NCBI RefSeq assembly: GCF_006345805.1
Contig: NC_043005.1
Span: 3,286,001-3,350,000, forward strand
Length of the DNA stretch: 64,000 nt
Direction: 5' to 3'
DNA from: Octopus sinensis
Lineage: Eukaryota
The notes below the pieces were generated by a model, which saw only the letters and a list, made by a program, of their open reading frames with translations, was not told the origin of the DNA and did not search any database. Below are positions 3,876-63,951 of the stretch, in pieces; within the stretch, counting starts at the first letter, position 1, and the number at the start of each line of letters is the position of its first letter. The position numbers and the translations under genes are program-made.

Positions 3876-3879
<4 letters not shown>

Positions 3880-3922
<43 letters not shown>

Positions 3923-10059: not shown

Positions 10060-10302
10060 GAACCAGTCTCGGTCTGGACGAAGCCAAAGGAAGCTCTGGT
10101 GGAAGTTCGAAGCGCTTCTGACGTGCAAATCGATCGTCGGAACCGGGTGTAGGGGTGAAAGATCAATCGAGCTATATTGAAACGGGTTCCCTCCGAAGTT
10201 CCCCTCGGGATAGCTAGCGCCAGCGGGAGAACGACACACAATTCCGTTCGGTAAAGAGAACGATTGGAGGCCCCGGGGACGTTGAAGGCTTCATTCGAAC
10301 TC
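10060..10302 (+). pseudogene. 28S (LSU) rRNA fragment
   Basis: Matches conserved LSU blocks CGAAGCCA.AGGAA.CTCTGGTGGA, CTGACGTGCAAATCG.TCGTC, TAGGGG.GAAAGA, GGTTCCCTCCGAAGTT.CCCTC.GGATAGCT, CGGTAAAG.GAA.GATT.GAGG. About 240 bp only, no flanking rDNA. Confidence 0.85.
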
Positions 10303-10878
10303 AGAGCAGGCAAAACGGGCCGCTCCCCTCCTGAGACAAACCTACCTGCGATAGATCAACATTCAGTCGAAGACATTGGTGTCTGTCGTTCATTCATGGA
10401 ACAAACGCCACCCCTGATCATATGAATCTTTGAAATGTAGAATAAAATATATTTTTCTGGACTTTTCTATGCTGGTCTGTGTGATTATGGCTTTCTCTAG
10501 GGGATTCTTAGAATTTTATCCGGTTCCAAGTTTTGGGAATACCACAGTGCTCTTCATGTAATAATTCCTGCAAGACGAGGTTCTGGATTTTCCTTTTGTT
10601 TTTCTGGTGTCTGATGGAAAGGAACTGAGCCTGTCCTGTGTTTTGTATGCCTCTCTTTTCCCTGTGGTTCTCAGTAATTGAGCTCTTTCAATGCTCACGC
10701 CGACCTTTTCCCAAGTGTGGCTATTTGCTGTTGATATGTGCATCTGTTATTTTTACTTCTTGCAACGTGCACCGTTGTGACATTTAATGTTATAGCATTT
10801 TACTCACTACATAAGTATGTTTGTAGCGATAATGAGCTGAGGACTGAAAAGTGTTAGGACAATATTCAGCATGGGATT

Positions 10879-11473
10879 AAAGGCGGCGAGCTGGCAGAGG
10901 GATTAGCACGCCGGGCGAAATGCTTAGCGGTATTTCGTCTGCCGTTGCGCTCTGAGTTCAAATTACGTCGAGGTCGACTTTGCCTTTCATCCTTTTGGGG
11001 TCGATTAAATAAGTACCAGTTACGCACTGGGGTCGATATAATCGACTTAATCCGTTTGTTTGTCCTCGGGTAATAAAGAAATAGGTATTTCATCTGCCGA
11101 GGTCGACTTTGCCTTTCATTCTTTCGGAGTCGATTAAATAAATACCAGTTATACACTGGGTCGATCTAATCGACTTAATCCCTTTCTCTGTCCTTGTTTG
11201 TCCCCTCTGTGTTTAGCCCTTTGTGGGCAATAAAGAAATAATACTCAGCAAGGGATTAAGGCGGCGAGCTGGCAGAAACGTTAGAACGCCGGGCGAAATG
11301 GGTGACCGTATTTCGTCTGCCGATACGTTCTGAGTTCAAATTCCGCCAAGGTCGACTTAGCCTTTCATCTTTTCGGGGTCGATAAATTAAGTACCAGTTG
11401 CGTACTGGGGTCGATCTAATCGAGTATCCCCCTCCACCAAAAGATTTCGGGCCTTGTGCCAAGAGTAGAAAAG
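10879..11473 (+). mobile_element. Tandem SINE family B copies
   Basis: GGCGGCGAGCTGGCAGA head, GAGTTCAAATT B-box and GTCGACTTTGCCTTTCATCC core at 10879-11240 (with a partial internal second unit) and 11258-11473. Confidence 0.9.
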
Positions 11474-12051
11474 AATATTTAGCATGGGATTGTGGTATGA
11501 AGATGTGCGATGCGGACAGTAATATCTAGAGAGGAGATGTAGTTGGATTGGGAAAGTGCATGGATAGGAAAAGAAGTTTTAGCTGCAGAGCGATGGCGTT
11601 GTATGTATTGTTTTTGTATCAGGTTGTGGTGTAGACATTGAAATTGTTTCTCGTAGGGGGCGGTGCTATGGTGGTGTGCAGTGATTGAAGTTGTCTGATC
11701 AACGGTCCTTCTCTGTGTGTGTGTTTCATATTGTTTTGGCGTTAAATGTGAATACTTGCACTTCTAGTGTGTGTGCGTGCGTGTGTAGTCACACACACAA
11801 AATACGGTTAAGCGTTAAATGAAGGAGCATCCAAGTAGGGGATCGAATGTATTTTTACAAGGAAAAGGTTGACAGTGACTTCGACATTTCAGCCGGTGCA
11901 GACTTCGCCTGACTGAGTAAAGATTTCATAGTTTGAGGATGCTGGCACGCGGCGAAACTTCGCACTCACTGTCAAACTCATATATATATATAGGCAAGGA
12001 AAAATTATAACTTATCATGTTGAGTAGCTTGTTTATTATTAAATACGATAC

Positions 12052-13514: not shown

Positions 13515-13760
13515 TTCTATTATTATTATTACAGCAACTGGTCGCACAAGGTTTAACGTAACCCACTGAAGCAAGCCAGCACGCTCGCATCATCACCACG
13601 GGCGATGGCGAGGCGAAGGCGTTGTGAAAGCCAAGCACTCTCACGGGCATCACCTGAGACCCCGGTGAGGCGAGCTGCCAACTTTGACAAGAACTTTGCG
13701 GTTAGTGGCCCAGCCTGGAAGCGATAATTCACTGTCAGGTTCCGTAACTTCAGGGTCTTT
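13515..13760 (-). mobile_element. 3' fragment of a CRE-like (REL-endonuclease) non-LTR retrotransposon
   Basis: GPLTAKFLSKLAARLTGVSGDARESAWLSQRLRLAIARGDDASVL resembles the CRE-clade C-terminus (GD.RE..FL.QRLS.AIQRGNAAS.L) and is followed by an (AAT)n tail. Confidence 0.6.
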
Positions 13761-14134
13761 CTGTCTTCCGTTCGGCTACGGAAGCAGTAACCCTCCCACA
13801 AAAATAAGTAGCATGGTAATAGCCTGGCTTGTTCAGGTCCATTTCTTATACCTGTGCCTTTCGTTGCAAATTCTACAAGCCGCGCCAGCCAAATCATGTC
13901 TTACGTTTCGTTAGTGCCTTTTCAATGGGCAACCATTTAACTGAAATAAAACTTACCACAGAAAAAAATGAAGCAGGAACCCCTAGCCACTTACACAAAC
14001 ATACAAGAATAAAACAGAAATGCATATGTATTTATGTATGTACGCTGTGGGGAAAAAAACTGGAAAAATTTCCATCAAAACAGAGATGTCCTTCATACGA
14101 GGGTTTTAAGTAGAACTTTACGAAAAAATTTAGA

Positions 14135-14150
14135 GGCCCTGAAAAGGGCC
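14135..14150 (-). promoter_or_regulatory. Histone mRNA 3' stem-loop (H3 copy 1)
   Basis: GGCCCTTTTCAGGGCC on the minus strand, 30 nt after the stop. Confidence 0.95.
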
Positions 14151-14180
14151 GTTGGTCTAAAGCAGTAGCTTATTTTCAAT

Positions 14181-15205
<1,025 letters not shown>

Positions 15206-15253
15206 ACTGTGCAAGTTTTTCCAACTTCGTGGTCGTCACTAGCGACAAATCCC

Positions 15254-15269
15254 GGCCCTTTTCAGGGCC
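15254..15269 (+). promoter_or_regulatory. Histone mRNA 3' stem-loop (H4 copy 1)
   Basis: GGCCCTTTTCAGGGCC. Confidence 0.95.
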
Positions 15270-15461
15270 ATTCATATCCTAATGTAAGCCACCTCGCCCT
15301 CTTTGATATGCTTAAATAGATTTAGTTTAAATTTCAGATTCGTTTTCAAGGAATTTTTTATTGTCCCTTTCTATGGGCCCCTCATCTCCTTACGTGCGAT
15401 GTACCTTCATTGGATCGCAATATCTGGGATTGATAAAAGGCGGTGATTATGGTAGGGTTAT

Positions 15462-15590
15462 AAGGCACGCCCGTGCGAAATGCTTAGCGGCTACGTTCTG
15501 AGTTTAAATTCCCTTGACTTTGCCTTGGAACACGAAACTATTCATCTAGCCCTCCCCTGAATGCTGGCCTTGTGCCAAAATTTGAAATTA
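15462..15590 (+). mobile_element. SINE family B, internally deleted (paralogue at 38005-38128, minus)
   Basis: CGAAATGCTTAGCGG…GTTCTGAGTTTAAATT…TTGACTTTGCCTT…GGCCTTGTGCCAAAATTTGAA. Confidence 0.65.
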
Positions 15591-16222
15591 ATAATTTGAT
15601 ACACTATGTTTGAACTTAGTCAATTTTATCTTGGAGCATTGCGTGAACTGTTTACAATTACTAACAACTCCAGGATCTCCAATATTCCAAATAGCTGGAA
15701 AACACCCAGTTCAACTCCGAACTCTGGAGTGTATTTCACCAAATTTGCCTGAAGAATAGCAATTCTTTTTCACTGCCGAGCTTTCAACTCCTCATTTCGT
15801 TAAAATCCTTAAAAATATATTATAAAAGCTGATGGTTACAGGTGGGAACTACTTCAGTTCCGCACAATACAGTATTTATGCTAGAAATAACAGCTACATG
15901 CAGGCTCCGGGTGTGCGAACATGGAGAGCTACTTACTAATAAAGCATCTGGACTGCTTCTCGACTCGGATCCACGCAAGCAAAATCGTATGAATTGTGGA
16001 CCCACAGCAGTATATTAAGGGTCCAACCCCTCATGACATTTCTTTGGGGGAATTTTCATAGCTTTTTGCGAATGTTTGTTGTACACAGAAATTCATAGGC
16101 TTTCGGAAATTTTTAAATCCCGTTTTAAAAATACGGAGTCCGAATCTGCAATTATGTTCCCTGTTTAATTTCTAAAAAAACTTTTGGACTCCAAATTAAA
16201 AACTTTACTGTTAGCAAATGTT

Positions 16223-16259
16223 GGTACTACTTAAGAACAGCGGTTCTTTAAGTAGTACC
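16223..16259. mobile_element. Collapsed MITE (37-bp hairpin) with 8-bp TSD
   Basis: GGTACTACTTAAGAAC…GTTCTTTAAGTAGTACC flanked by CAAATGTT at 16215-16222 and 16260-16267. Confidence 0.8.
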
Positions 16260-17532
16260 CAAATGTTTTCTTAGGCACACTCGCTTGGAGCGGTGGGGGT
16301 GAACATTTCAGTTACGTCCGAATCAAATGTTTGGGGAAAGAATATTGAAAAACATCAATGTTTGACAAAAGAAAAAAACGTGTAAGGTGTGAGATGTTTA
16401 GAAATGGCTAAATCTCTCTTAAATCACAGCTTTTCATCTGGAAATTAAATAAATTGCAGGTTCGGACTGTCTGTATCTTAAACCGATGACTTATATTTTC
16501 CAAAAGAGTGGAAATTCTAGAATTTATGGGGTGGGGGTAAAAATTGGCGGACGTCAGAGATAGGAAGCACACATAAGTTGTATTTCTCCGTTTTGACGGA
16601 TTTTTCAGTGTTTCTTGGAAATGGATCTGGAGCATCATTTTAGCAGAAAAAAGAAATTCTCGAAAATTGTTTTTTTAACCTCTCCCCTCCGGACTGGGCA
16701 TAGAAACCTTTTCGATATAATTAGAGAACAAGTATACATTTTCAGACGAAAGAGCGAGTGATTTAATAGACATTTGGCTGTTGTTTCTAGCACATCCCAT
16801 GACCGGTTAGGTTGATAAAGGCCAAAAATTTCCCCCCAAAATATTTTTTTTAATAGCATTTGAGTTTTTGCAGATAATGTGGAAATGGGGAGAAAAATAT
16901 TGAAAAACATGAAGGTAGTCGTGGGATGTGCTAGAAACAAAAGCCTTCTCCCATGGTTAAGTGCATTCCAAAATCGGTCCATGGAAAAAACGGAGAAAAT
17001 CCAAATTGTTCGCTAAATCGCATGAATTCCAGTGTCGTGAAATAAAATCGAAGGGCATATGGTGTGCTTGGATCAGAATTCCACAATCCCGATATAAAGA
17101 TTTCATTACTGTGATTTTATTTTACGTAACCTTTTCCGACAAATTCTCCAAAACAAGTGAGAGATCCGCTTACAGACCTTCCCACTCAGGGTCAGTTGCC
17201 TAAAAACCATGTACTAAGTTGTGCTGCTGGGCAACTCTTAAGCAAGGTGTAGATATTACAAACCACGAATCTGTAAATCTAGCTTTTAAACATTGAATAA
17301 GCTAGAGGAATCCCCAGAATACAATAGTAAACGAAGGCGTCCAGAGATAAAAACGGTTAAGAACCTTTCTTTATTATCCATAAGGATTTACATAGATGGG
17401 GACAATACAATGATTTGGGCACTCGGCTATACCCATAACCTTATCTACGGAATGACGCCTTTTATGTCTTGCTATTAAGAATCGAATCGCAAATAAAATA
17501 AACGGTAAGCAGACTAAAGTTAAGATGTAGTG

Positions 17533-17548
17533 GGCCCTGAAAAGGGCC
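17533..17548 (-). promoter_or_regulatory. Histone mRNA 3' stem-loop (H2A copy 1)
   Basis: GGCCCTTTTCAGGGCC on the minus strand. Confidence 0.95.
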
Positions 17549-17582
17549 GTTGGATTAAGCCAAGCACAATCACCGAAAGCGC

Positions 17583-17960
17583 TTACTTGGAAGCCTTCTG
17601 GGTCTTCTTGGGGAGAAGAACAGCCTGGATGTTGGGAAGAACACCACCCTGGGCGATGGTCACTCCAGACAAAAGCTTGTTCAATTCTTCGTCGTTACGG
17701 ATGGCCAACTGTAAATGACGGGGAATAATTCTGGATTTCTTGTTGTCTCTGGCAGCATTTCCTGCCAATTCCAACACTTCGGCAGCCAAATATTCCATCA
17801 CAGCAGCCAGGTAGACTGGGGCTCCGGCACCAACACGTTGGGCATAGTTTCCCTTACGCAGAAGACGGTGGATACGTCCGACAGGGAACTGAAGTCCAGC
17901 ACGGGACGAACGGGTCTTGCTCTTTCCTTTCACTTTACCTCCTTTACCACGACCAGACAT
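17583..17960 (-). CDS. H2A: Histone H2A (canonical)
   Basis: 125 aa [34 protein letters not shown]…[12 protein letters not shown]. No SQ(E/D)Y tail. Confidence 0.99.
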
Positions 17961-18228
17961 TTTCAGAGTTTGATACTAATCTGCAACGAAACAGAGAGAA
18001 CAATGAAATAAAAGGCGCCTTTCGCCTTTAAATACCGCCAAGGGGGCTCCAGCAGTCGGAGATTTGCACTAAGCAGGTAAAAAATGAGCGGGCTTTTGTC
18101 ACGTGGCACACTTGTCAAATTCTAACCAATGAAAATGAAGGGCGCGGATTTAGAAAAAATGTTCTTCTGCTGAGCCTAGTTGACAACTATAAATAGAGTG
18201 GAGGTTCGGATGGTCGTTATGAGACATC
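17961..18228. promoter_or_regulatory. Bidirectional H2A/H2B promoter
   Basis: TATTTAAA (minus, ~18027-18034), AAAGGCGCCTTT dyad, ATTTGCAC octamer-like 18062-18069, CACGTG 18100-18105, CCAAT 18126-18130, TATAAATA 18188-18195. Confidence 0.8.
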
Positions 18229-18606
18229 ATGCCACCAGCACCAGCTACCGCTTCGAAAGGAGCCAAGAAGGCTTCGAAGGCCAAAGCTTCACGTCCCCCC
18301 GGAGACAAGAAGCGCAAGAAGAAGAGGAAGGAAAGTTATTCCATCTACATCTACAAAGTAATGAAACAAGTCCACCCCGACACTGGCATCTCCAGCAAAG
18401 CTATGTCCATCATGAACAGTTTTGTCAACGATTTGTTCGAAAGAATCGCTTCTGAAGCCAGCCGTTTGGCTCACTACAACAAACGTTCGACCATCAGTAG
18501 CCGTGAGGTGCAGACTGCTGTCCGTCTGCTTCTCCCTGGTGAGTTGGCCAAACACGCCGTCTCTGAAGGTACCAAGGCTGTCACCAAATACACCAGCAGC
18601 AAGTAA
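18229..18606 (+). CDS. H2B: Histone H2B
   Basis: 125 aa [14 protein letters not shown]…[27 protein letters not shown]…AVTKYTSSK. Confidence 0.99.
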
Positions 18607-18636
18607 ATCTATTCTAGTCTTCGTCTATTTGACAAC

Positions 18637-18652
18637 GGCCCTTTTCAGGGCC
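18637..18652 (+). promoter_or_regulatory. Histone mRNA 3' stem-loop (H2B copy 1)
   Basis: GGCCCTTTTCAGGGCC. Confidence 0.95.
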
Positions 18653-20188
18653 ATCCATATTCTCTTGATTGTAACCCGATTTTCTACTTATGTGATTGAA
18701 GAAATAGCCGTAAAGGTGAGGGAAGTAATGTTGGTTATGGAGGACCCGATTCTGACTAAATTATTTGAATCCTCTCCCACCCTTTTCATTAACTTTTTCC
18801 GGAATTTTTTTTTGTTTGTGAAATAAGTAGAAAATTACGATTCTGAAAAAAATTGGTTAAATTACAATTAACCCAGGTTATCCACGTGCTAGAAATAACA
18901 GCCAAGTCTCAACTGCGATAACCTAGTGTAATCAATCGACTGACCTTTCTGCAAAGATTTCTTTCAGAGTAATTTTCCTGCATTAGAAATTAAAGTGGTT
19001 TTCTTTTTAAAACTTAAAACCTTTTGCGATTTTTTTCAATCAATATACGTGGGGAAAAGATGAACATTAAATTCTAATTTACGGAAAGTTCCGACCCCAA
19101 AATCCCCTGCTCGCCGTCATGCTGTCTAAAAGTGAAAATGAATGATTTTGTCTTCCACATAAATTACTCTGAAAGAAATCTTTGAAAGGTGAGTAGATTG
19201 ATTACATTTTGTGAGATTTGGCTGTGATTTCTAGCATATGGCTAGCCTGCTTGAAGGCCTAGGGGCATTTTTTTGAAAAATTGAAATTTTACAAATTTCA
19301 GCATCGTAATATTTCGCAAAAAAGAAATTTCCGGAAAAATGAGGGGAGATTTTTGAAATTTTCAGAATCGGATCCTCAAACCCAAAAAGTGGAATTCCGT
19401 AAAAAAAATCCATTTTACCGAAAGTTATGACGGAAAAATCGGATCTTGAGAATTTTCCGAAAGCCCCCCCCCCCCCCCGGGTTGTTAGCCCCAATTTTTT
19501 TTTTTTTTCATATTCGTTTTCTACATACTTGTTAACACCCAACAGGCTGGTTTATTCTTTTTTTGTTCCCGGGTGAAGATCTTAGTGATTCGTGGGTCGA
19601 TAAAAAATCGCTGTGTATATAAAATAGATCTGAGCTGAAGGAAGTTCAGTACAATTTTTTATGGAAATTACCGAACAAATGGATAAACTTTCCGAGGAGC
19701 CAAACATTAAATGGCTGCAAGAATTTTATGATCCGAAACATTTGAGAATTTTAATAAACGCGAATTCTTCACAAATTTCGGTCCCCCACCCCCTCCATCT
19801 TTGTATTCCACGTCCTGAAACCCTTGTAATAAACATTTTTAAAAAATTAACCCCTTCCTACTACATTCTTTCACAATGGTTGGACCAGAGTGTCTATATT
19901 GAAACGAAAGATTAATTTTAATTGTAATAAGTACAATGCAACATTTGACTGTCAAAGATATTTCTTTATTATCCATAAGGATTAACACAGATGGGGACAA
20001 TACAATGATTTGGGGTCAAAACATGAAACTTTTTACAATGAAATCGGATGGGTTATTTACAATGGAGTTACAATGAAATCGAATAAATACAAACAACAAA
20101 GAGACAAATGAAGTGAAAAGAACAGGGTAGCCGACCCCACGAGCCCTGTCATTTCAGCTGAGACTTTTGGTAGGTGATCATGGCGTGT

Positions 20189-23100
20189 TCATGCAGGGCC
20201 TTTCACACCCAGCATCCGTGCTACATGCATCCATCTTTTTTTGAATATAGACTTTGTCAGACACCTTTTCTCTAGCTCCACCTTCCTCTTCAGATGGAAC
20301 CTGAAGAAGTTTGTTAGGGCGGTGCCAGAGATCATGGTGTCTGACATTAAACCTTTCACTCTTGTCTTCCATATAACCTCTTTCGCAACTGCTACTGTCA
20401 CGAGAAAGCAATGCTTACCTTCGTTCGTCATGAAACCAGGTGGGTCAATTTTAAGGATTGACTCAGACGACAGCTGTACTCTTCCCTCGTCCGACAACAG
20501 GTGTTCGGCATAAACCCACACTTCCGAAATCTCCGGGCATTTAACAATGGCGTGCAGGACTGTTTCCACATCCTGTCCGCACCTTGGGCAGGCCGAAGGT
20601 CCACTGTGACCATGTCTTGTGAGTTTATCTCGAACGGGTAAGGCTCCTCTGTAACACTGGTCTGAATGTCCTTTGGAACAGGCTGTCCAACTGATTACCA
20701 TCGAGGCCCAGGGTCCTTCCCAGGGTATCGTCATTTCCGGCCTCTACCAACCTGCTATAGAACGCTGCGGTTGTACCAAAGCCACCGGCATTGCCCGAGT
20801 TGCGGAAGCGTACGAGAGCCTTTCGGCACTCCGAATACCACATACTTGATCTTAGTCTGCGACGAAACCAGGTTTCTCTACCACCAAAACTGGCAAAGCT
20901 GGGGAACGTCTGTTTTGCGAGCGGGGACCACACCCGTTCACCATCCAGGTAGAGCCAAAGATGCCTTAACCTCAGCGCATGCCTGCGCATCAACAGCCAA
21001 GGCATCCCTAACCCACCCTTTAACGGTTGTTGACAACAGATAGAACGTCTCACAAGAGGTTTGGAGCCTTTCCACAAAAAGCGAAAGATTTGCCTCTCCA
21101 ACTTGGTCACCCACGAATCCGGACAGGGGACGACGGTTAGGCGGTATATGATGACCGATGCCATGAAGACATTGGCCACCTCCGCCCTTCCTTTCAAGGA
21201 TAGCCACCGCCAAGACCAAATCCTGACCACGTGGGCCACCTTGCTCGTGACCTCAGACCAGTTCTTTTCTATCTGGAGGCCTGGACCAAACCAGACCCCT
21301 AGCAATTTAACCGGACCCTCCGTCCAGCATCCCACGATGCTGTTCGAAGGCATCGGCTTGCCAACCCAGGTGCCGAGTTGCAAGCCGACTGACTTTTCCC
21401 GGTTAATTTTTGCTCCTGTCACCGCCTCGTACTCCTTGATGGTGTTTCCTACATTCTGTAGGTGTTCCACCTTGGTCACGATGATGGTGATATCGTCCGC
21501 ATACGCAGTAACAGAACCTCCACCTCCTGGGTTCGTCGGGATGGCGCTCAGCTTTCGCAGTAATGGCTCGAGGGCCATCACGTATAAAAGCGGGGAGAGC
21601 GGACACCCTTGACGAACTGACTGTTTGATGTGGAATGACCTGGAAAGCAGACCATTCACCCGTACGATCGAGTCGATGTTGTCGTATAACTGTGTGATCC
21701 ACCCGAGGAAGCCGGCACCCAGCCCGAACTGTGCGAGCACAGACACCAGGTAACGATGGTTCACCCTATCGAATGCTTTACTCTGGTCTAAGTGGACCAA
21801 TGCCCCACCCTTGCCAGTGTTATTCTCAAACCCTTCTATGGTGTAACGTATGAGATGAAGATTGTCCTGAATAGTTCTTCTGGGGACTGCACAGGTTTGT
21901 GCCTCCCCGATCAGATCTTTCGCGACATGCGTCAACCTTTTCGCCAAAACCTTGGCCAAAATCTTCACCTCTGCGTTTAGCAGGGTGATGGGCCTAAAAT
22001 TATCTATTCTGTCCCCTTTGCCCGGGTCTTTCCTGATCAGCGTCACCACTCCCCGGCGTACAGATCTGGGAATCCTCCCATTCTGATTCCAGTTCGCGAA
22101 GACGCTGGCCAGTATTGGCCCGAGCAAGTCTGGCATACTTCTATATAATTCGTAGGGTAAACCATCGAGTCCCGGTGCCTTACCTCTGCCACAGTCAGCT
22201 ATGGCCTCCGTAATTTCCTCAAGTGTGATTGACCCTTCACAGCTCTCCGCCCCCCACCCCGAGAGGCGCGGCAATCCGGCGAGGAGGCCCGTGAGGTCCA
22301 CCCCCTCATCCGGACCACCCCCGCCCCCGAAAAGGTGGGCGAAGTGCTCCTGAAAGTTCCGACACATCTCCTCTGGTTCGCTTACCACATCACCCTTCTC
22401 GTTCGTCACAGACTTAATTGTGGAATCATTTCCGTGTTGAGCCTCCACAACTCGTGCCCATCTAGCGGCCTTAGTACCCTCGCTTCCCATTGCGCGGATT
22501 CTAGCCCTGACGATACAACCCATGTGTTTGGCTTCGAGGTGCTGGTTCAATTCCAGTCTCTTCGCTTTCACCAGGGTCCCATCGCCAGACCTTATGGCTT
22601 CTTCTAGAGCTTTAGCTAGTCCCTCTTCTTTCTTACGCCTTTTCGTTGCTAGTCCTATGCTATATCTGATGGACTCGTATTTTATGGCTCTCTTGAGCGC
22701 TAACCACCATTTATTGTTGAGAATGGAACCGGTTAACGCCCTCTGGATTAGTAACCTAATCCGGTTTCTGTACTCCTCCATCACCAGTAAGGATTTATTG
22801 AGTTTCCAGTAACCGGATCCTCTTCTACATACGCTATCTAAGTACAGCTCACTCGTGACCATCTTGTGGTCGCTGTAGCTGACCAAGTGGAACTGTGGAC
22901 ACTTAACTATATCTTTGTCTACTCTTCTAACAAGAATTCTATCTATATAAGACTTGGAAGACCCGTCGCTATTTGACCACGTCCACAGTGGAGCGTTCGG
23001 GAATTCCTGTCTGTATGGATCTACCAGCTGGAAACGACTCAGCAGATCCCGGAAGCCACTGTTAGGTGTCCTATTGGTTTTGGAGCCACCGCTATCGACA

Positions 23101-23540
23101 CGCGCATCGACGATAGCGTTAAAGTCCCCTAGCATCACTATGGGTTTTGACGTCCCTAGAAACTTCTCCAGGCCTCGGAAGAAATCAGTCTGTTGTGTTT
23201 GGGGTGCGTACACCGCCACCAGCCTGACCTCCCTACCACATCTGAACGTCAGGTCCAGGACGACCAGTCTGCCCTCTGGGTCAACAAAAATCACCTTTTT
23301 CTCCGAAACTCTATTCCTTTTAAGTAGGACCAACACTCCACTTCCTCCCCCCTGCTGGCATGGAGAGATATATCTCTCGTAGCCATTTAGGAGCGGGAGT
23401 AGATCTCTTGGTCCCTTTAACCGAGTTTCAGTAGCTACAATAATGTCTAAATTGTGTGACCTGATGTCATTTAGAAAACGTCCCTGTTTCCGGTTCGCCA
23501 TCAGGCCAGGTACATTTATACAACCTACTTGAACAGCCAT
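20189..23540 (-). pseudogene. Tx1-type ORF2: APE endonuclease, RT, C-terminal zinc knuckle; one frameshifting deletion
   Basis: INVPGL, ATETRL, VYAP, GDFN, IDRIL, SDH, GKAPGLDGLPYE, NFRPITLLN, DQSKAFDRV, RQGCPLSPLL, YADD. CPRC…ETVLHAIVKC continues in ORF 20189..20734 after a shift at ~20660. Confidence 0.92.
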
Positions 23541-23547
23541 AAATCAC

Positions 23548-24894
23548 TTACCTTGCTCCTTCCGAGTCCGAGCGGGGGGTAACCGCCTCCTCCTTGGCCG
23601 GGTCTCGTGGGTTCGGCTGGATCAGGCCCTCGTACAGGCGGCTCGAGACCTCCATTCGCAAAGGACCTACATCCTTCCTGAAATTGTTCGCCAGTACATT
23701 GTAGGCTTTATGATTTATTTTGTAGACCTTTATCAGGTCCTTTTTTAATTGTTCTTCCACCTCTATCTCTTGGAGGTGCTGCGTTTCTATACGTCGCATC
23801 ACCTCGCTGTCAACCGTCCGGATCGCGACGTAGGCGTTGTTGTCGTTCTCCGGCTTCTTTGCTTTTTTGATGTCTCGCTTTTTCCCTTCGGTTTTTCCTT
23901 CTGTTCTTCCTTTTTCCGGGGATGGATTCCTGTGCTTTCTTTTTGCGGCAGCGGCTGTCCATCCCTTTCCCTCTTTCTCTTCTGATGTTGACGTTGTTCG
24001 ATCTACTGTTGCTGGGGTAGCAGGAAATTCGGCAGAGGTTGCGGGCTTTACTGTTTTGTCTGTTCCTGCTGGTTCGCAGTTCTTCCGGATGTGCCCTTTT
24101 TTCCCGCATAGGAAACACCTGGGCTGGCGACCTTCCACCATTACTGGTAGCTGGTTGTCATTGATGTCTATCGCCTCGGTGAACTCGTCTAGGGTGGCTG
24201 GCTCGGCCTGCAGTGTGACAGTCACTTTCTGGCCGACCCAGAATTTTGCTTCTTCCACCACCGCGCTGATTATGTTGATCTTGTCCCTGAGGCCCGAGGT
24301 TACGGCTGCCACCAGTCTCTCAGGCTCTATTTCTGGGGGGACCCTTGTGATCGTAATTTTAGTGGTCCTCCTGCCCATGTATAAAGGTAGTAGAAAGACC
24401 TCGTCCGTCTTCAGAGGCTCCACTGAGTGGAGTTTAGCTTCTTCCACTGTGCCGAACCTCACTTCGACTGTGGCAAATTTTTTCCCTCTGGCGATAAATC
24501 TTATTTTATCCCATACAGGACCGAGGCACTTCTCTACCTGGTTTTCGGTGGAGAACCCAATTCTTCTTTCCTTGACATTGTATGTCTTGAAGATCACTGT
24601 TCTCTGTTCGACGTCCTCTTGCGTCTCCCTGGGTTGTATTAATTTGGTCTTTGTTCCGGACTTCGTAATATATTGCTCCAAAGCGTCCAAGTTGTCAATG
24701 CATATTTCCTTCTTTTTTCCTCCAGCTGCTGCTGCGAAGTTTAGAGTTTCTTTCACGGCACCTGCCTCTAGGCTTGGTGCCGATATTATCCTTCTAGCTA
24801 CTGGCTTTCGTTTCTCCGTGTCTGACTCCATGTCTGAAGATGGTTTTGGCTCACGGTTTTCAGATTCTGCTGTGTCTGTCTCTGAGTTTGCCAT
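23548..24894 (-). CDS. Tx1-type ORF1 (gag-like nucleic-acid-binding protein), 448 aa from ATG
   Basis: Open frame from MANSETD (ATG 24894) with CCHC knuckle CFLCGKKGHIRKNC. Confidence 0.88.
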   Translation of the reverse strand: MANSETDTAESENREPKPSSDMESDTEKRKPVARRIISAPSLEAGAVKETLNFAAAAGGKKKEICIDNLDALEQYITKSGTKTKLIQPRETQEDVEQRTVIFKTYNVKERRIGFSTENQVEKCLGPVWDKIRFIARGKKFATVEVRFGTVEEAKLHSVEPLKTDEVFLLPLYMGRRTTKITITRVPPEIEPERLVAAVTSGLRDKINIISAVVEEAKFWVGQKVTVTLQAEPATLDEFTEAIDINDNQLPVMVEGRQPRCFLCGKKGHIRKNCEPAGTDKTVKPATSAEFPATPATVDRTTSTSEEKEGKGWTAAAAKRKHRNPSPEKGRTEGKTEGKKRDIKKAKKPENDNNAYVAIRTVDSEVMRRIETQHLQEIEVEEQLKKDLIKVYKINHKAYNVLANNFRKDVGPLRMEVSSRLYEGLIQPNPRDPAKEEAVTPRSDSEGAR

Positions 24895-25525
24895 TGTTTG
24901 GCTCCTCGTACAGTGGGGGTGGCAGTACTGCCTACCTGTTGGGATTCTGCAGCCACTGGCTGTCGACGATGATGAAAAAGTCAGCAGTTGGGTAGTCCGA
25001 TGGTCAAGCAACAAAGTCGATATGTCAACTGAAAACCGTGTGAAACAAGACGGCCAAAGAATTGACTGTCAAAGAGAGAATGCAGAAACGTCGGTTTTCG
25101 CCATGTGGGGAACCTTGAAAATTAGTATTTACTTGAAATACCGAAACGAAAATTCGTGTATAAAATGGATTACACACACTCACGACTTTGTTTCCTCATA
25201 ACTTTTCAGAAAAATGGAATTTTCTACAAATACCTTTCAAATTGCGCCAAAATAATTCAACAGAATCCAACGTTTTTTGGCAACGAAGAATCGGAATTTC
25301 AAAACTTAAATTTCTTCCCTATTTATTATTTTTTTCGTTTTTGACTTTTTCAAATTTTGGGGGGGATTCCATGTAAGTAAATGCGAGGATTATGATTTTG
25401 TATTGAACAAAAAATTCTAAAGTTTCAAGTTTTGAATAAAACTACACCCTGCACACATGAACGAAATGAGCATAGCTAGAAATAACACCCAAATCTCTGT
25501 CGAATATGCACAACCCACATTTCTT

Positions 25526-30227: not shown

Positions 30228-30681
30228 TTTCAATCCACCCGCTCCCCTCCAACAAGAAAAGAAAAGACACAAAAAATGAACCCAGGCCGAACATTGTATG
30301 TATGACGGGAAAAGAAAATGGATGAGTATCAATGGTGTGACAGGGGAAAGATCAGGTATGCAGTAATTGGAAATGGACGAGTTTATGGTATGTGAAAGGG
30401 AGGATTGGGAAGTGAAAATTGTTGAAAAAATCATGTGGGATTTGGAAGAGACGTTTGAAAAAAGGATGGAGATGGAAGGATTTTGTATAGGAACGGAACA
30501 AGGAACATTTGTGTGGGATCAAAGGACAGGTAAGTGATGCTAGCGAATGGGGCCGTTGACACCACTTTCATATATCATTTTCATATTTCATTTTGCCCAT
30601 ATCTATGTAATTGTGATGTTCTATGTCCCCAATGTTTGTAGCGTCCCCTCTATGTAGCCCCTAGTGGGTAATAAAAAATCA
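30228..30681 (+). mobile_element. 454-bp 5'-truncated retroposon with 16-bp TSD
   Basis: GATATGCTTTAGTTTC at 30212-30227 and 30682-30697. Ends GTCCCCTCTATGTAGCCCCTAGTGGGTAATAAAAAATCA. Confidence 0.75.
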
Positions 30682-30697
30682 GATATGCTTTAGTTTC

Positions 30698-35390: not shown

Positions 35391-35501
35391 TAGCAAGACA
35401 TAAAAGGCGTCATTCCGTAGATAAGGTTATGGGTATAGCCGAGTGCCCAAATCCTTGTATTGTCCCCATCTATGTAAGTCCTTATGGATAATAAAGAAAT
35501 A
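35391..35501 (+). mobile_element. 111-bp retroposed fragment with Tx1-like 3' end (paralogue 17366-17474, minus)
   Basis: Flanked by GATTCTTAA (35382-35390, 35502-35510). The last ~55 nt are about 90% identical to the Tx1 3' terminus. Confidence 0.7.
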
Positions 35502-44029: not shown

Positions 44030-46684
44030 AAACCCGTGTACTCTTCCAAGACGTGACAGCAGTCGTTCGACGTAAACCCACAGCTCTGAAATTCTCGAAC
44101 ATTGCACAAGTGCGTGCGGAAGAGTTTCACTGTCCTCCTCACATCTTGGGCAGGTGAGTGAGCATGAGGCACCGTGTCTTGCAAGTTTATCATGAACTGG
44201 TAAAGTTCCTCGGTAACACTGCCAGGTTAGGGACCTCAGGAAGTTGTTCAGGGCTCCCGGCCCGAATGTCCTTTGGTACAGGCTGGCTAGTTGGCCTTCG
44301 TCGAAGCCCAGGGTTTCTCCCAGAGCGTCATCACACTTGGCCTCTACTAACCCTGTATAGAATGATGAGGTGGAACCCACGCTACAAGCATTGCCCGTGC
44401 GGCAAAAGAGCACCAGTGCCTTGTGACACTCTGCCTGCCAAGCACCCAACTTTGGTCTACGTTTGATCCATGGTTCTAGTTGACTAAAATTAGTGAACCT
44501 AGGAAGCAACAGTTTAACGAATGAAGACCACACCCGTTTACCAGCGAGAGCTTGCGCATCATCAGCCACGGCATCCCTAGCCCACCCTTTAGCGGTTGTT
44601 GGCAACAGATAGAGCGCCTTACAAGAGGTCCTCTGTCCTTCCACAAAAGCGGAAGAGCAATCGTTCCATCTTGCTTAGCCACGAATCGGGACAAGGTACT
44701 ACGGCTAGGCGGTAGATGATCACAGATGCGATAAACACATTTGCGACCTCCGTCCCGCCTTTCAGGGATAGCAATCGCCCAGACCAGGTCTGGGTTAGAT
44801 GGGCCACCCTGCTCGTGACCTCGCTACAATTTTTCTATATCTGGAGGTCTGGCGCAAACCAGACTCCGAGCAGTTTCACCGGTCTGTCCGTCCAACGTCC
44901 CACGACGCTGCTGCACAGCATCGACTTGCCTCTCCAGGTGCCGAGCTGCAAGCTGACCGACTTTTCCCGGTTAATCAATGCTCCTGCCACCGCCTCGTAT
45001 TCTTTAACGGCTTCACCTACCCAATGTAGGTGTCTGCATCAGATACGATGGTGGTGATGTCATCCACGTACGCTGTCTCTGATTTTCCACAACCTAGATC
45101 TCGCGGGACGCCATTCAAATCCTCCAACTTCCGCAGTAAGGGTTCAAGAGCCAGCACATACAGAAGTGGGGAGAGCAGACATCCTTGAAGAACAGACCGC
45201 CTGATAGAGAACGGTTCCGAAAAGAAACGGTTCCGAAAAGAAACTGTTCACTCGAGCGATCGAGTCGATGTTGCCGTATAATGCTGTGATCAACCGCGAA
45301 AGATTGGGCCAGCCCGATCGCCGAAAGAACCGCCACCAGATACCGATGGTCGACCCTATCGAAAGCTTTAGCTTGGTCTAAATGTACCAGCGCCCCACGC
45401 TTGCCAGCTATCCTATTAACCCGCTCTAAGGTATAGCGTACAAGATGGAGATTGTCGTGTATGGATCGGCGTGGGATGGCACAGGTTTGTGTCTCCGCGA
45501 CTAGTCCACCCACGACCTGCACCAATCTTTTTGCTAATACCTTGGCCAAAATCTTCACCTCTGTGTTAAGCAGAGTGATGGGCCGAAAGTTATTCACTAG
45601 ATCCCCTTTGGGTCCTTCCTTAGCAGCATCACCACTCCCTAGCTCACAGATTTCGGTATGAACCCGTTCTGTTGCCAGTTGGTGAAGACGCAAGCCAGCA
45701 ATTACCCAAACAATTCTGGCATATTATAATAAAATTCGTAGGGAAGACCATCTAGTCCTGACGACCTGTCCCCACAACAATCCGACAAGACGTCTTCTAC
45801 TTCCGCAGCTGTGATCGGCTTTTCACTGCATTCCGCTTCCCGCCCCGAGACACGCGGCACACCGGCGAGGAAGTCCGCAGGGTTCAACCTGCGCTCCGGT
45901 CCATCGCTCCTCCCGAAAAGCTGGCCAAAATGCTCATAGAAACCTTGCACATCTCCTCGGGTTCGTTTACCAATTGCCCTTGATTGTTTGTCATAGATCT
46001 TATTTTGACATCGTTACCATGTTGAGCTTCTACCGCACGGGGCCATCTCACAGCGCCAATCCCATCTCGTCCCATTGCACAAAGCTTAGCCTTGACAATG
46101 CATCCCTCGTGTTTAGTCTCGAGGTGTTGGTTGAGCGCCAATCTCGCGACCAACACTTGGGATGCATTGCCATTCTCCAATGCCTCTTCTAGGGCCTTAA
46201 CTAAGTCCCTTTCTACTCTAGTCTTCTTAGTTGCTAGTTCTTTACTAAATCTAATTGACTCAATTTTGATGGCTCTCCACCATTTGTTGTTAATAATGGC
46301 GCCTGCCAGAACCCTCTTTACTGACTCACTAATCCGGTTCCTGTATTCCTCACAGGTCAAAAGAGACTTGTTGAGTTTCCAGTAACCGGGACCTTGTCTA
46401 CATATCCTATCTAGGACAAGCTTGTGATCGCTGTAGCTGACATAGTGGAACTGTGGACAACTAGCTATGTTCTTATTCTTACGTCTAACTAAAATCCTGT
46501 CGAGATAAGATCTAGAAGATCCGTCGTTGTTCGTCCATGTCCACACTGGAGAGTCCGGAAATTCTAGCCTGTACCGGTCTGCCAGCTGAAAGCGATCGAG
46601 CAGATCGGCGAGGGATGGGTTTCCCCTTCTATTGGGATACGGGACAACACAATTTACGCGTGCATCGCAGAATAGTAAAACCAC
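44030..46684 (-). mobile_element. Decayed Tx1-type ORF2, a different subfamily from 20189-23540, truncated at both ends
   Basis: WTWTNNDGSSRSYLDRIL, YSDHKL, PGYWKLNKSLL, NFRPITLLNTEVKILAKVL, HLDQAKAFDRVDH, CPRC…ETLPHALVQC. Many frameshifts. Confidence 0.9.
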
Positions 46685-62358: not shown

Positions 62359-62574
62359 TTGTTTCTTTACTACCCACAAAGGGCTAAACACAGAGAGGAC
62401 AGACAAACGGTCGATTACATCGACCCCAGTGCGTAACTGGTACTTAATTTATCGACCCCGAAAGGATGAAAGGCAAAGTCAACCTCAGCGGAATTTGAAC
62501 TCACAACGTAACGGCAGCCGAAATACCGCTAAGCATTTCACCCAGCATGCTAACGTTTCTGCCAGCTCGCCACC
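62359..62574 (-). mobile_element. SINE family B, full length, Tx1-like tail
   Basis: GGTGGCGAGCTGGCAGAAACGTTAGC head. Tail TGTCCTCTCTGTGTTTAGCCCTTTGTGGGTAGTAAAGAAACA. Confidence 0.88.
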
Positions 62575-63951
62575 CTAATAGGGAGAAAATATTGAAAGAC
62601 ATTTGTTGGAGTGAGAAAGAAACAAGGTGGTCATGGGATATGCTAGAAACAACAGCCAAATCTCCCTTCAATCAAATTCTTTTTTACCGAAAAGGCTTGT
62701 AGTTTTTCTGGAGCATAGTGCCACCAAAATCGATCCGGAGAGAGTAAGAGTTTTTTTTAAACCTTCGACTTTTATCTTTGTTAGAAAGATTCTTTAGATT
62801 ATTTCCAAGGGCATCGTGAAAAAAAATCTGGAAACTCCCCGTCAAAAGAGAGTAATTGCAACTGATGTGGGCGATCTTATCCCTGACGTCCGCCCCCGTG
62901 TGTGCCCTACATACACCCACCTCATGACAAATGGTTTACGTTCCCGTAACCTAGCAGTTCGGCAAGAGACTGACAAAGTACCAGCCTTAAAGTCTTGGAG
63001 TTTATTTGTTCGACTGAACCAAAGCAGTTTAATGCCAGAACGAGTAAAGGATAAAATCGTGAAATATATAATGAAAGGAGTTTAATTACCGGGCTTTCGG
63101 ACCAGGAGGCCCACATAAGTGGAATTTACTTAGTTTTGGCGGATTTTTTTTTATTTTTCAAGGCGTTCGAAATTATGGGAGGTGGGCATTATCTTATGAA
63201 TTAACTTTTTTACCCACCGGAGCAATTTTGGAAGACTTCCTCTTGACAAATTATATTTTTGCCAAAAAAAAACCCGTTTGCGGATGCGGAGATTCCGGAA
63301 AATTGTCCCCACCCACAATATCTTCATTTGACTTTTTTTCCCTAACCCTAAGCAAACATTTTTGAAAACGTTTTTCAGAATCTCCGTGTTTTGCAGCACA
63401 TTTTGAAAAAAAAATTTCTTAAAATGAAGAAATCAGGGGGTAATTTCAAAAATGCTGATCTCCGCAGCCGAAAACGTAAAAAAAACTTTTTAAGAGGGGG
63501 TTTTTTGGTGGGTACAAAAGGAAGTCTTGTAATTTTACCAATATTCTTGCCACGACGCACTTATGAACAATGGAAAAAACCTTAGACGAAAAGGTAATTT
63601 CAGGGAGATCTTGGCTGTTGCTACCAGCACCTTCCATGACCACATACCGTGTTTCTTTGACACCGACATGCATTTCAGTACCTGATCCCATAAACACACT
63701 TCACACAATTAAAAACTTGGCTTTCCCTTATTACCTCTCAACGAACTGTCATCCGTATCTTTTCTTTATTTACATTTCTTTCTTACTTTTACTGTGAAAG
63801 AGGAGAAAGTTTAAGACACGAACGTGCATATGAAATGGATGCGGGGGAGAAAGAGACAGAGTTCCACTCGTTACGCCAAGAACATACGTTCACTCTCACA
63901 TTAAAGAATCGCAAACAAAGTCGACAAGAAGACTATTTGTAGAAAATAAGG

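What the first reader, a model, noticed from the sequence alone, without database searches (positions are those of the whole stretch)
19959..20015. Tx1 LINE and SINE family B share a 3' terminus with a co-varying hairpin: candidate LINE-SINE partnership
The Tx1 ends …TTGTATTGTCCCCATCTGTGTTAATCCTTATGGATAATAAAGAAATA, with no poly(A), directly at its TSD. The SINE at 11194-11240 ends …TTGTTTGTCCCCTCTGTGTTTAGCCCTTTGTGGGCAATAAAGAAATA, about 40 of ~50 aligned positions identical by eye. The SINE at 62359-62410 and the TSD-flanked inserts at 30228-30681 and 35391-35501 end the same way. Just before AATAAA each has a 4-bp hairpin whose sequence changes while pairing is kept: ATCC/GGAT (Tx1), GCCC/GGGC (SINE), GCCC/GGGT and GTCC/GGAT (inserts). 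This mirrors the 3' stem-loop recognition known for eel UnaL2/UnaSINE1, whereas mammalian L1 recognises poly(A). The inference is that a Tx1-type RT recognises a structured tail and mobilises a major SINE family in trans. I cannot check whether this pair is already in Repbase or Dfam.
Basis: partly seen in the sequence, partly recalled or inferred. Interest (0 to 1): 0.8.

Follow-up and report, generated by a model that had tools for sequence, protein, structure and literature searches.

The report
LINE and SINE share a 3' tail
A full-length L1/Tx1-type jumping gene and a minority subfamily of the local short repeats (SINEs) end in the same ~50-base tail that can fold into a hairpin, which is the classic mark of a SINE borrowing a LINE's copying machinery; this looks like a new example of a known arrangement, and it is not proven.

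Summary
A TSD-flanked, near-intact LINE (25061..19959, minus strand) ends in ...AATAAAGAAATA with no poly(A). Its last ~52 nt match a SINE tail at 42 of 52 positions (z = 15.7). The tail motif occurs 5 times in the window against 0 expected.

The partnership reading is plausible, but parts of it are overstated.
- The hairpin is larger than described. It is a 33-nt terminal stem-loop with about 11 pairs that buries AAUAAA in its 3' arm. It is predicted independently for the LINE, a SINE and one insert.
- Covariation rests on one LINE-type versus SINE-type contrast: two both-sided changes, P about 0.004. The GTCC/GGAT "intermediate" arose after insertion, because its segmental duplicate keeps ATCC/GGAT.
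- The loops differ (UUAU versus UUUGU), so the true driver may be a sister LINE.
- The LINE-like tail (called tail B here) is carried by only 3 of 9 independent SINE copies in the window. It is not shown to be a major family.
- "Tx1" could not be verified. ORF2 is collinear with L1 ORF2p, and ORF1 has a weak CCHC knuckle.

Verdict: a probable new member of the known stringent LINE/SINE tail-sharing kind. Interest is moderate.

The parts
19959..25061 (-). Full-length non-LTR retrotransposon (LINE), 5103 bp, L1 superfamily and Tx1-like
   Evidence: Bounded by a perfect 14-bp TSD. ORF1 and ORF2 are present. ORF2 is collinear with human L1 ORF2p, E = 3e-66.
25062..25075 (-). 5' target-site duplication, TCTTTGACAGTCAA
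   Evidence: Exact 14-mer repeat of 19945-19958.
19945..19958 (-). 3' target-site duplication, directly abutting ...AATAAAGAAATA
23548..25014 (-). ORF1. The open frame is listed from a TTG; the first ATG is near 24894. It has one CCHC zinc knuckle and no Transposase_22 domain
   Evidence: Pfam zf-CCHC E = 0.0054, 17.2 bits, below the 20.8-bit cut-off.
20625..23540 (-). ORF2, main frame: APE endonuclease plus reverse transcriptase
   Evidence: Pfam Exo_endo_phos 2.6e-17 and RVT_1 9.6e-32.
20189..20734 (-). ORF2 C-terminal part in a shifted frame (one frameshift within 20625-20734), with a zf-RVT CCHC domain
   Evidence: Pfam zf-RVT 7.4e-08. The ORFs overlap.
19959..20010 (-). Shared 3' tail module of the LINE (the finding), ~52 nt
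   Evidence: 42/52 identical to the SINE tail at 11189-11240, z = 15.7. Profile hit.
19963..19991 (-). Predicted terminal hairpin: UCU-G-UGUU-A-AUCC [UUAU] GGAU-AAUA-A-AGA. It is followed by the 4-nt overhang AAUA (19962-19959)
   Evidence: RNAfold -7.0 kcal/mol, z = -2.4, 5 of 200 shuffles as good. The same consensus comes from RNAalifold.
10882..11083 (+). SINE copy 1: head plus CORE-like body plus tail B with an internal deletion (tail at 11048-11083)
11084..11240 (+). SINE copy 2: 5'-truncated and internally deleted, with a complete tail B at 11189-11240 (inner stem GCCC/GGGC). It starts immediately after the last base of copy 1
62360..62575 (-). SINE copy 3: full head and body, with tail B at 62360-62409 (inner stem GCCC/GGGU)
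35391..35501 (+). 111-bp insert with a 9-bp TSD, GATTCTTAA (35382-35390 and 35502-35510). Its last 56 nt are the LINE-type tail; the 55-nt body is unrelated to this LINE
17364..17474 (-). Segmental-duplication copy of the 35391-35501 insert. It is not an independent insertion and keeps ATCC/GGAT
   Evidence: The flanks are identical. The duplication is 16888-18609 versus 35989-34257 at 98.6%.
30228..30681 (+). 454-bp insert with a 16-bp TSD, GATATGCTTTAGTTTC (30212-30227 and 30682-30697). Its tail is close to the SINE type (GCCC/GGGU, loop CUAGU). The body is unique in the window and has no ORF2 similarity
44039..46672 (-). Second, degenerate relative of the same LINE lineage (49-78% aa identity per aligned block). 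It is truncated at the 3' end, so no tail is available
   Evidence: tblastn; sequence.

Best explanation
The 3'-terminal ~50 nt are a LINE-derived tail module. It is shared by an autonomous L1-superfamily (Tx1-like) LINE lineage and by one subfamily of a SINE with a CORE-like central domain. The subfamily's tail is called tail B in this report.

Shown here:
- The tails are homologous.
- The LINE and two other TSD-flanked inserts end at exactly the same nucleotides (...AATAAAGAAATA or a close variant) with no poly(A). The three tail-B SINE copies end in the same motif, but clean TSDs were not established for them.
- The module sits on at least four unrelated bodies.

Inferred:
- The ORF2 protein of this LINE lineage does not prime on poly(A), as mammalian L1 does. 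It recognises the terminal RNA hairpin, which has three tiers: an outer stem UCU/AGA, a middle stem UGUU/AAUA and a variable inner 4-bp stem, with a 4-5 nt loop and a 4-nt AAUA overhang.
- It starts reverse transcription at the fixed position just 3' of that hairpin. This would explain why new copies carry neither downstream flank nor poly(A), although AAUAAA lies inside the 3' arm.
- SINE RNAs carrying the same module are copied in trans.
- The SINE-type and LINE-type tails differ in the inner stem (compensated) and in the loop (not alike). The immediate driver of the SINE subfamily is therefore more likely a sister LINE family with the GCCC-UUUGU-GGGC version than this very copy.
For: - Homology: 42/52 identical, z = 15.7, with unrelated genomic 60-mers scoring at most 26 against 49. 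The motif occurs 5 times against 0 expected.
- The LINE is a genuine retrotransposition product ending in the tail. A perfect 14-bp TSD abuts ...GAAATA.
- The LINE is autonomous and young-looking. It has ORF1 plus APE-RT-zf-RVT, with only one frameshift.
- A LINE-type tail variant (ATCC-TTAT-GGAT) is also carried by an independent 111-bp TSD-flanked insert with a different body. The LINE's tail is therefore not simply a copy of the SINE's tail.
- The same three-tier hairpin is the minimum-free-energy fold of the LINE, SINE_11240 and the 35501 insert on their own. It persists in 100-nt contexts.
- RNAalifold gives the same consensus structure.
- 95.4% of cells are paired, against 46-49% when the partner columns are slid.
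- Of 6 substitutions between the LINE and SINE_11240 tails on 48 aligned columns, 4 form two both-sided changes in adjacent pairs (A-U to G-C and U-A to C-G). P = 0.004 under random placement.
- SINE copy 2 begins exactly after the last base of copy 1's tail. This is compatible with template switching onto a precisely defined 3' end.
- The size and identity of the shared region fall within published mollusc SINE/LINE pairs: 35-61 bp at 72-95% (PMC11481361).
- Stringent L1-clade LINE/SINE pairs with a stem-loop and compensatory changes are known in plants (PMC3472496).
Against: - Only one LINE copy with a tail is available. The second relative in the window is 3'-truncated. The closest outside relative, P0001 (59% identity), sits on a contig cut before any tail.
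- Hairpin energies are modest: z about -2.3 for two tails, and not significant for the 62360 and 30681 copies.
- Seven of the 11 pairs show no standard-pair variation and so are uninformative. Only one pair shows a strict double change in the tool count. The shuffle control gives 16 of 500.
- The loop sequence and length differ between the LINE and the SINE.
- The SINE copies are old, 77-89% identical to one another, while the LINE looks young. Concurrent activity is not shown.
- No experiment bears on the question.
Confidence: 0.62

Rival explanations
1. Chimeric copy. This particular LINE picked up a SINE-derived or other foreign tail by template switching or recombination before its last retrotransposition. 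The tail is not the normal end of the LINE family, and the family recognises something else, such as poly(A).
For: Only one tailed LINE copy could be examined. No outside copies were retrievable. Similarity to other elements stops abruptly ~56 nt from the end, as expected of a swapped module.
Against: The TSD abuts the tail, so the tail was the functional 3' end in that retrotransposition event. No SINE body sequence lies upstream of it. The LINE-type variant (ATCC, loop UUAU, two extra A's) differs consistently from the SINE type. It recurs on an independent insert with another body. No poly(A) is present anywhere.
Confidence: 0.15
2. The tail is shared by descent but is no longer, or never was, a specific recognition element. 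The conserved blocks (AATAAA and U-rich or GU-rich stretches) serve 3'-end processing or RNA stability. The SINE is mobilised by relaxed recognition or by another LINE clade present in the genome. The apparent hairpin and its two compensated pairs are chance.
For: AAUAAA is the canonical polyadenylation signal and is the most conserved block. Folding z-scores are weak. The covariation is a single contrast. Another APE+RT LINE lies in the window at 1095-3221. Most SINE copies here use a different tail.
Against: Copies lack poly(A) and downstream flank, which argues against use of a polyadenylated 3' end. Homology extends ~35 nt upstream of AATAAA. P = 0.004 for the compensated pairs. The same structure is recovered independently from three sequences.
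Confidence: 0.15
3. The short TSD-flanked inserts and the tail-B "SINEs" are products of one LINE's template-switching onto miscellaneous RNAs: chimeric retrocopies made of a LINE tail plus another RNA. They are not a self-propagating SINE subfamily.
For: The tail is found on four unrelated bodies. SINE copy 2 is joined head-to-tail to copy 1. Only three tail-B SINE copies were seen.
Against: The three tail-B SINE copies share a SINE-type tail variant (loop UUUGU, GCCC stem, TTTAG) that is distinct from the LINE type. This indicates descent from a SINE master with that tail rather than repeated fresh chimeras. The body-tail junction is the same in copies 10882 and 11093 (TAATCGACTTAATCC...).
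Confidence: 0.08

Closest known systems
Eel UnaL2 / UnaSINE1 and zebrafish ZfL2-1/ZfL2-2 (L2 clade, stringent type)
   Same: The LINE and the SINE share a ~50-nt 3' tail with a terminal stem-loop close to the 3' end. There is no dependence on poly(A). The stem sequence can vary if pairing is kept (PMC4176376; PMC4494074 cites Kajikawa and Okada 2002).
   Different: The LINE clade is different: here the L1 superfamily, with ORF2 collinear with L1 ORF2p. There is no terminal short tandem repeat; the end is a fixed AAUAAAGAAAUA. The hairpin includes the AAUAAA signal. No Rfam family matched the tail at E-value up to 5. No functional data exist.
Stringent L1-clade LINE/SINE pairs in plants and green algae (maize LINE1-1_ZM lineage; Chlamydomonas L1-1_CR / SINEX-3_CR)
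   Same: These are L1-superfamily LINEs that share a specific 3' end with a SINE. The maize lineage has a putative stem-loop with compensatory stem changes (PMC3472496).
   Different: Those elements still end in poly(A) repeats. The element here has none. The host here is an animal (probably a mollusc), and the SINE has a CORE-like central domain.
Crocodilian Tx1-Mar LINEs and SINEU SINEs
   Same: A Tx1-clade LINE is proposed to mobilise a SINE in trans (PMC4494074).
   Different: That pairing was inferred from a shared insertion target (Mariner-N4_AMi) and shared snRNA-derived 5' heads. Here the evidence is a shared 3' tail. No target specificity is seen: the four insertion sites are unrelated.
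Mollusc HCD SINE / LINE partnerships (bivalve CORE, V, Meta and Deu SINEs with CR1-Zenon, Nimb, L2 and CR1 LINEs) and octopus OR1/OR2 CORE-SINEs
   Same: The SINE architecture is modular (head, conserved central domain, LINE-derived tail), and one SINE body carries alternative tails. The shared region matches in size and identity, 35-61 bp at 72-95% (PMC11481361). CORE-SINEs are the main octopus SINEs and L1-Tx1 is active in Octopus vulgaris.
   Different: None of the four LINE clades reported as partners in bivalves is L1/Tx1. No LINE partner for cephalopod CORE-SINEs was found in the papers searched. Repbase and Dfam could not be consulted.

Membership tests
Stringent-type LINE/SINE pair with a common 3' tail | The SINE 3' end is homologous to the 3' end of the LINE's 3' UTR | tested here: met
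   42/52 identical, z = 15.7. The motif occurs 5 times against 0 expected.
Stringent-type LINE/SINE pair with a common 3' tail | The LINE partner is autonomous (endonuclease plus reverse transcriptase) | tested here: met
   APE, RT and zf-RVT domains plus ORF1, with one frameshift.
Stringent-type LINE/SINE pair with a common 3' tail | Both elements terminate at the same defined nucleotides, flanked by TSDs, independent of poly(A) | tested here: met
   The LINE, the 35501 insert, SINE_11240 and SINE_11083 end in AATAAAGAAATA. TSDs are 14, 9 and 16 bp for the LINE and the two inserts. TSDs of the SINE copies are ambiguous.
Stringent-type LINE/SINE pair with a common 3' tail | A conserved 3' stem-loop supported by covariation | tested here: inconclusive
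   The same hairpin is predicted in 3 of 5 tails, z about -2.3. 95.4% of cells pair. Two compensated pairs in one contrast, P = 0.004. Only about 3 independent lineages are available.
Stringent-type LINE/SINE pair with a common 3' tail | The LINE proteins mobilise the SINE in trans, dependent on the tail | not testable with these tools
   This needs a retrotransposition assay.
Stringent-type LINE/SINE pair with a common 3' tail | Overlapping periods of activity of the LINE and the SINE | not testable with these tools
   A single 64-kb window is available. No further copies were retrievable.
Tx1 clade (L1 superfamily) of non-LTR retrotransposons | The RT domain groups with named Tx1 references in a phylogeny (RTclass1 or Repbase) | not testable with these tools
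   No named Tx1 sequence was among the hits of three protein searches. No Repbase was on hand.
Tx1 clade (L1 superfamily) of non-LTR retrotransposons | L1-type ORF2 layout: N-terminal APE, RT, C-terminal CCHC | tested here: met
   Residues 6-865 align collinearly with human L1 ORF2p residues 11-891, E = 3e-66. zf-RVT at the C-terminus. This feature does not separate Tx1 from L1.
Tx1 clade (L1 superfamily) of non-LTR retrotransposons | Type I-like ORF1 (RRM and/or CCHC knuckle) rather than the Transposase_22 type | tested here: inconclusive
   There is no Transposase_22 hit. zf-CCHC scores 17.2 bits, below the 20.8-bit cut-off. This is consistent with the description in PMC5203782.
Tx1 clade (L1 superfamily) of non-LTR retrotransposons | Insertion into a specific target sequence (common in the clade but not universal) | tested here: not met
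   The four insertion sites have unrelated TSDs: TCTTTGACAGTCAA, GATTCTTAA, GATATGCTTTAGTTTC and ATATTCAGCATGGGATTAA.
tRNA-derived CORE-SINE | A tRNA-derived head with an internal Pol III promoter | tested here: inconclusive
   A B-box-like GAGTTCAAATTCC is seen by eye. ARAGORN found no tRNA. Rfam found no tRNA match at E-value up to 5.
tRNA-derived CORE-SINE | A central CORE domain | not tested
   The resemblance of GGGGTCGATAAATTAAGTACC... to the MIR core is from memory only. No reference library was available. Papers state that octopus OR1/OR2 are CORE-SINEs.
Rfam families of RNA elements (would include any curated LINE 3' element) | A match to a covariance model | tested here: not met
   No Rfam match at E-value up to 5 in 19900-20250, nor in the two inserts other than a weak histone stem-loop.

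The most novel reading that the evidence does not exclude
An animal L1/Tx1-type LINE lineage has abandoned poly(A) priming. Its ORF2p recognises a terminal hairpin that sequesters its own AAUAAA signal, and it starts cDNA synthesis at a fixed AAUA overhang. Through this module it drives one branch of the CORE-SINE expansion of a cephalopod-like genome. This would be the first tail-sharing (stringent) L1/Tx1-SINE pair described in animals. It would also be a tractable system for asking how L1-type ORF2 proteins switch between structured-RNA and poly(A) recognition.
Probability: 0.35. Interest if true: 0.55.

Novelty: new member of a known kind. Interest (0 to 1): 0.36.

Why it matters
SINEs are reported to make up about 12% of octopus genomes, and their autonomous drivers are not named in the papers I could search.

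A shared, structured, poly(A)-less tail between an L1/Tx1-type LINE and a CORE-like SINE would do three things. It would name a driver lineage for one SINE subfamily. It would add an animal case to the few stringent L1-clade pairs, which are otherwise known from plants and algae. It would also offer a natural contrast to human L1 ORF2p, whose poly(A)-based template choice is now structurally characterised.

The principle itself has been textbook knowledge since 1996-2002: SINE tails derive from LINE tails, and a stem-loop is recognised. The gain is a new example, not a new mechanism.

Tried and rejected
1. Exact look-up of the window's ORF2: not on record.
2. Protein searches with ORF2 and with a 10-sequence profile. 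The closest relative is only 59% identical (P0001). No named Tx1 reference appeared.
3. The contig of P0001 ends 113 nt after the stop codon. A local match of its UTR to the tail (GTTTGT-TGTCCTC) scores 21, and the same score is reached elsewhere in that contig by chance. Rejected as evidence.
4. The more distant relatives P0002-P0004 (38-41% identity, from environmental and marine metagenome contigs) have long, unrelated 3' UTRs with undefined ends.
5. The antisense ORF that runs through the SINE was used as a protein query, to fish SINE-bearing contigs. No candidate was found.
6. Tail pattern scans. Metagenome contigs gave 10 hits, all chance matches in unrelated DNA. Genome contigs gave 1 chance hit in a Saccharibacteria MAG. 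The SINE core pattern in viral contigs gave 0 hits. Large-scale covariation and age-profile tests were therefore impossible.
7. MAFFT alignments of the tails put the indels at the ends and mis-registered the stem. I replaced them with a manual alignment that uses N as a gap placeholder.
8. Rfam at gathering and permissive thresholds, and ARAGORN, gave nothing for the tail, the inserts or the SINE head.
9. I searched for a LINE carrying the other SINE tail (tail A) in the window. None was found.
10. I considered reading the 19-bp repeat around the SINE dimer (10862-10881 and 11241-11259) as a TSD that proves single-unit insertion. The similarity continues into the following SINE heads, so the reading is ambiguous and I left it open.
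Full report
**What is at the site**

The finding's coordinates (19959-20015) are the 3' end of a full-length non-LTR retrotransposon on the minus strand, 25061..19959. It is bounded by a perfect 14-bp target-site duplication, TCTTTGACAGTCAA, at 25075-25062 and 19958-19945.

- ORF1 (25014..23548) has one weak CCHC knuckle and no Transposase_22 domain.
- ORF2 (23540..20625) has APE endonuclease and RT domains. After a single frameshift it continues in 20734..20189, which carries a zf-RVT CCHC domain.
- ORF2 residues 6-865 align collinearly with human L1 ORF2p residues 11-891 at E = 3e-66. R2 proteins match only over the RT domain.

The element therefore belongs to the L1 superfamily. The ORF1 type fits what the literature describes for Tx1-like elements of non-mammalian animals (PMC5203782). 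No named Tx1 reference could be brought in, so the Tx1 label stays unverified. The 230-nt 3' UTR ends ...AATAAAGAAATA directly at the TSD, with no poly(A).

**Is the shared tail real?**

Yes. The last 60 nt of the LINE were aligned locally against each tail.

| Tail | Identity | Score or z |
|---|---|---|
| SINE ending at 11240 | 42/52 | score 49; shuffles 12.5 +/- 2.3; z = 15.7 |
| SINE ending at 62360 | 32/41 | z = 10 |
| Insert 30228-30681 | 45/60 | z = 10.6 |
| Insert 35391-35501 | 52/56 | z = 35 |
| Best of 4200 unrelated window 60-mers | - | score 26 |

A degenerate tail pattern hits 5 times in the window and 0 times in 100 shuffles. A profile built from the tails finds only these sites, an internally deleted tail at 11048-11083, and the copy at 17364-17413.

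The copy at 17364 is not independent. It lies in a 98.6%-identical inverted segmental duplication, 16888-18609 versus 35989-34257, and has the same flanks as the 35501 insert.

**What carries the tail**

1. The LINE.
2. A 111-bp insert with a 9-bp TSD. Its last 56 nt are the LINE-type tail. Its 55-nt body matches nothing else in the window.
3. A 454-bp insert with a 16-bp TSD. It has a unique body, no ORF2 similarity, and a tail closer to the SINE type.
4. Three copies of a ~215-bp SINE, at 10882-11083, 11084-11240 and 62575-62360 (minus).

The SINE has a head with a B-box-like motif. It also has a central domain that, from my memory of the MIR core, looks like a CORE domain. ARAGORN and Rfam do not recognise the head as a tRNA.

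A profile of the SINE body finds 10 copies in the window, of which 9 are independent. Only 3 carry this tail (tail B). The other 6 carry a different tail...CCCCTCC..AAAA..GGCCTTGTGCC....

A second, degenerate relative of the LINE at 46672..44039 is truncated before its 3' end.

**The hairpin**

Folded alone, the last 37 nt of the LINE, of SINE_11240 and of the 35501 insert all give the same three-tier hairpin.

- The outer stem is UCU/AGA.
- The middle stem is UGUU/AAUA.
- The inner stem is a variable 4 bp.
- The loop is 4-5 nt, and a 4-nt AAUA overhang is left at the 3' end.

The energies are -7.0, -9.5 and -5.2 kcal/mol, with z = -2.4, -2.3 and -1.2. The fold persists in 100-nt contexts. The AAUAAA signal lies inside the 3' arm.

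MAFFT mis-registered the stem, so I used a manual alignment with N as a gap placeholder. On that alignment:
- 95.4% of cells pair, against 46-49% when partner columns are slid.
- Six of the 11 pairs are invariant.
- Three more pairs depart only by a single U.G wobble or by unpaired cells.
- One pair is a strict U-A/C-G exchange.
- One pair runs A-U / G.U / G-C.

RNAalifold predicts the same consensus structure with 10 pairs.

Between the LINE and SINE_11240 there are 6 substitutions on 48 aligned columns. Four of them form two both-sided changes in adjacent inner-stem pairs. Random placement gives this with P = 0.004. That is real but thin support, because it is a single contrast between two lineages.

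It says nothing about selection on the RNA. The GGGT in the 62360 copy may equally be a post-insertion C>T change. About three independent lineages remain: LINE type, SINE type and the 30681 type.

**How it most likely works**

Shown:
- The tail module is homologous across elements.
- The LINE and the two short inserts end at identical nucleotides directly at a TSD and have no poly(A). The tail-B SINE copies end in the same motif, but clean TSDs were not established for them.
- The module sits on unrelated bodies.

Inferred: this is a stringent-type system in the sense of Okada and colleagues. The LINE's ORF2p recognises the terminal hairpin and initiates reverse transcription at a fixed point just 3' of it. 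New copies then carry neither the downstream flank nor a poly(A), even though AAUAAA is present. RNAs that carry the module, including a SINE subfamily, are copied in trans.

SINE copy 2 starts at the base immediately after copy 1's ...GAAATA. This fits template switching onto a precisely defined 3' end, but other readings are possible.

A caveat comes from the zebrafish ZfL2 LINEs, close relatives of eel UnaL2. There, ORF2p binding depends on the loop more than on the stem sequence (PMC4176376). Here the loops differ (UUAU versus UUUGU), so the actual driver of the SINE subfamily may be a sister LINE family with the SINE-type tail.

The SINE copies are also old, 77-89% identical to one another, while this LINE is nearly intact. 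Concurrent activity is not shown.

**Comparison with what is known**

- The principle (SINE tails derive from LINE tails, with stem-loop recognition) is established for UnaL2/UnaSINE1 and ZfL2.
- Stringent pairs inside the L1 clade, with a stem-loop and compensatory changes, are known in maize and Chlamydomonas. Those elements end in poly(A) (PMC3472496).
- A Tx1-SINE partnership (Tx1-Mar/SINEU) was inferred in crocodilians from shared targets and shared heads (PMC4494074).
- In bivalves, CORE, V, Meta and Deu SINEs share 35-61 bp at 72-95% identity with CR1-Zenon, Nimb, L2 and CR1 LINEs. L1/Tx1 is not among the partners (PMC11481361).
- Octopus genomes are reported to be rich in tRNA-CORE SINEs and to hold active L1-Tx1 families (PMC8967140, PMC13282606). 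I found no paper naming a LINE partner for them.

The organism of the window was not determined, so the cephalopod guess rests only on these resemblances. Repbase and Dfam could not be checked.

**What could not be done**

No further copies of either element were obtainable.
- The window's ORF2 is not on record.
- The closest relative's contig is cut before any tail, and its partial match is at chance level.
- The SINE-derived peptide search found nothing.
- DNA pattern scans of three collections returned only chance hits.

**Verdict**

This is most likely a new member of the known stringent LINE/SINE tail-sharing kind, notable for its L1/Tx1-type partner and its poly(A)-less, AAUAAA-containing hairpin. 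The clade label, the covariation and the trans-mobilisation are all unproven from one window.

Noticed in passing
window 13622-18609 versus 40111-34257: A large inverted segmental duplication at 90-98.6% identity flanks the region that holds the LINE. Further near-identical repeats are 17532-18675 = 51495-52637 (99.3%) and 41921-43396 = 56773-55297 (99.8%).
   Followed up: partly
window 18632-18676, 52594-52639, 35312-35358 (all + strand): Histone 3' UTR stem-loops (Rfam RF00032). Two are above the gathering score (35.1 and 37.4 bits) and one is weak (24 bits). The window seems to lie in a repeated histone gene cluster. The 111-bp tail-bearing insert sits about 30 nt downstream of one of them.
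   Followed up: no
window 10054-10177 (+): An isolated 124-nt fragment matches eukaryotic LSU rRNA positions 822-945 (107 bits). It is preceded by an A-rich run and is probably an rRNA pseudogene fragment.
   Followed up: no
window 4200-4360, 11260-11466, 15465-15600 (= 38141-38000), 47530-47716, 47732-47930, 62352-62255: The same SINE body carries a second, more frequent tail (...CCCCTCC..AAAA..GGCCTTGTGCC...). Six of the 9 independent copies have it. No LINE with that tail was found in the window, so the SINE family appears to use at least two LINE partners.
   Followed up: partly
window 10862-10881, 11241-11259, 11466-11483: An ~18-20-nt motif, AATAYTYAGCAWGGGATT, occurs three times around the SINE cluster. 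It looks like the TSD of the tail-A SINE at 11260-11466, with one copy re-duplicated by insertion of the tail-B SINE dimer. The similarity runs on into the SINE heads, so the history is ambiguous.
   Followed up: partly
window 1095-3945 (+): Another LINE from a different lineage (APE + RT, 22% identical to the focal ORF2) has its 3' part running into a (CA)n microsatellite at about 3880.
   Followed up: no
window 47530-47930: Two tail-A SINE copies lie in direct tandem. Each is preceded by ATTATTATTAAAG, an (ATT)n-like junction.
   Followed up: no
window 20046-20081 (minus strand, LINE 3' UTR): The 14-nt motif GATTTCATTGTAA(A/C) is repeated twice within the LINE 3' UTR, upstream of the shared tail.
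   Followed up: no
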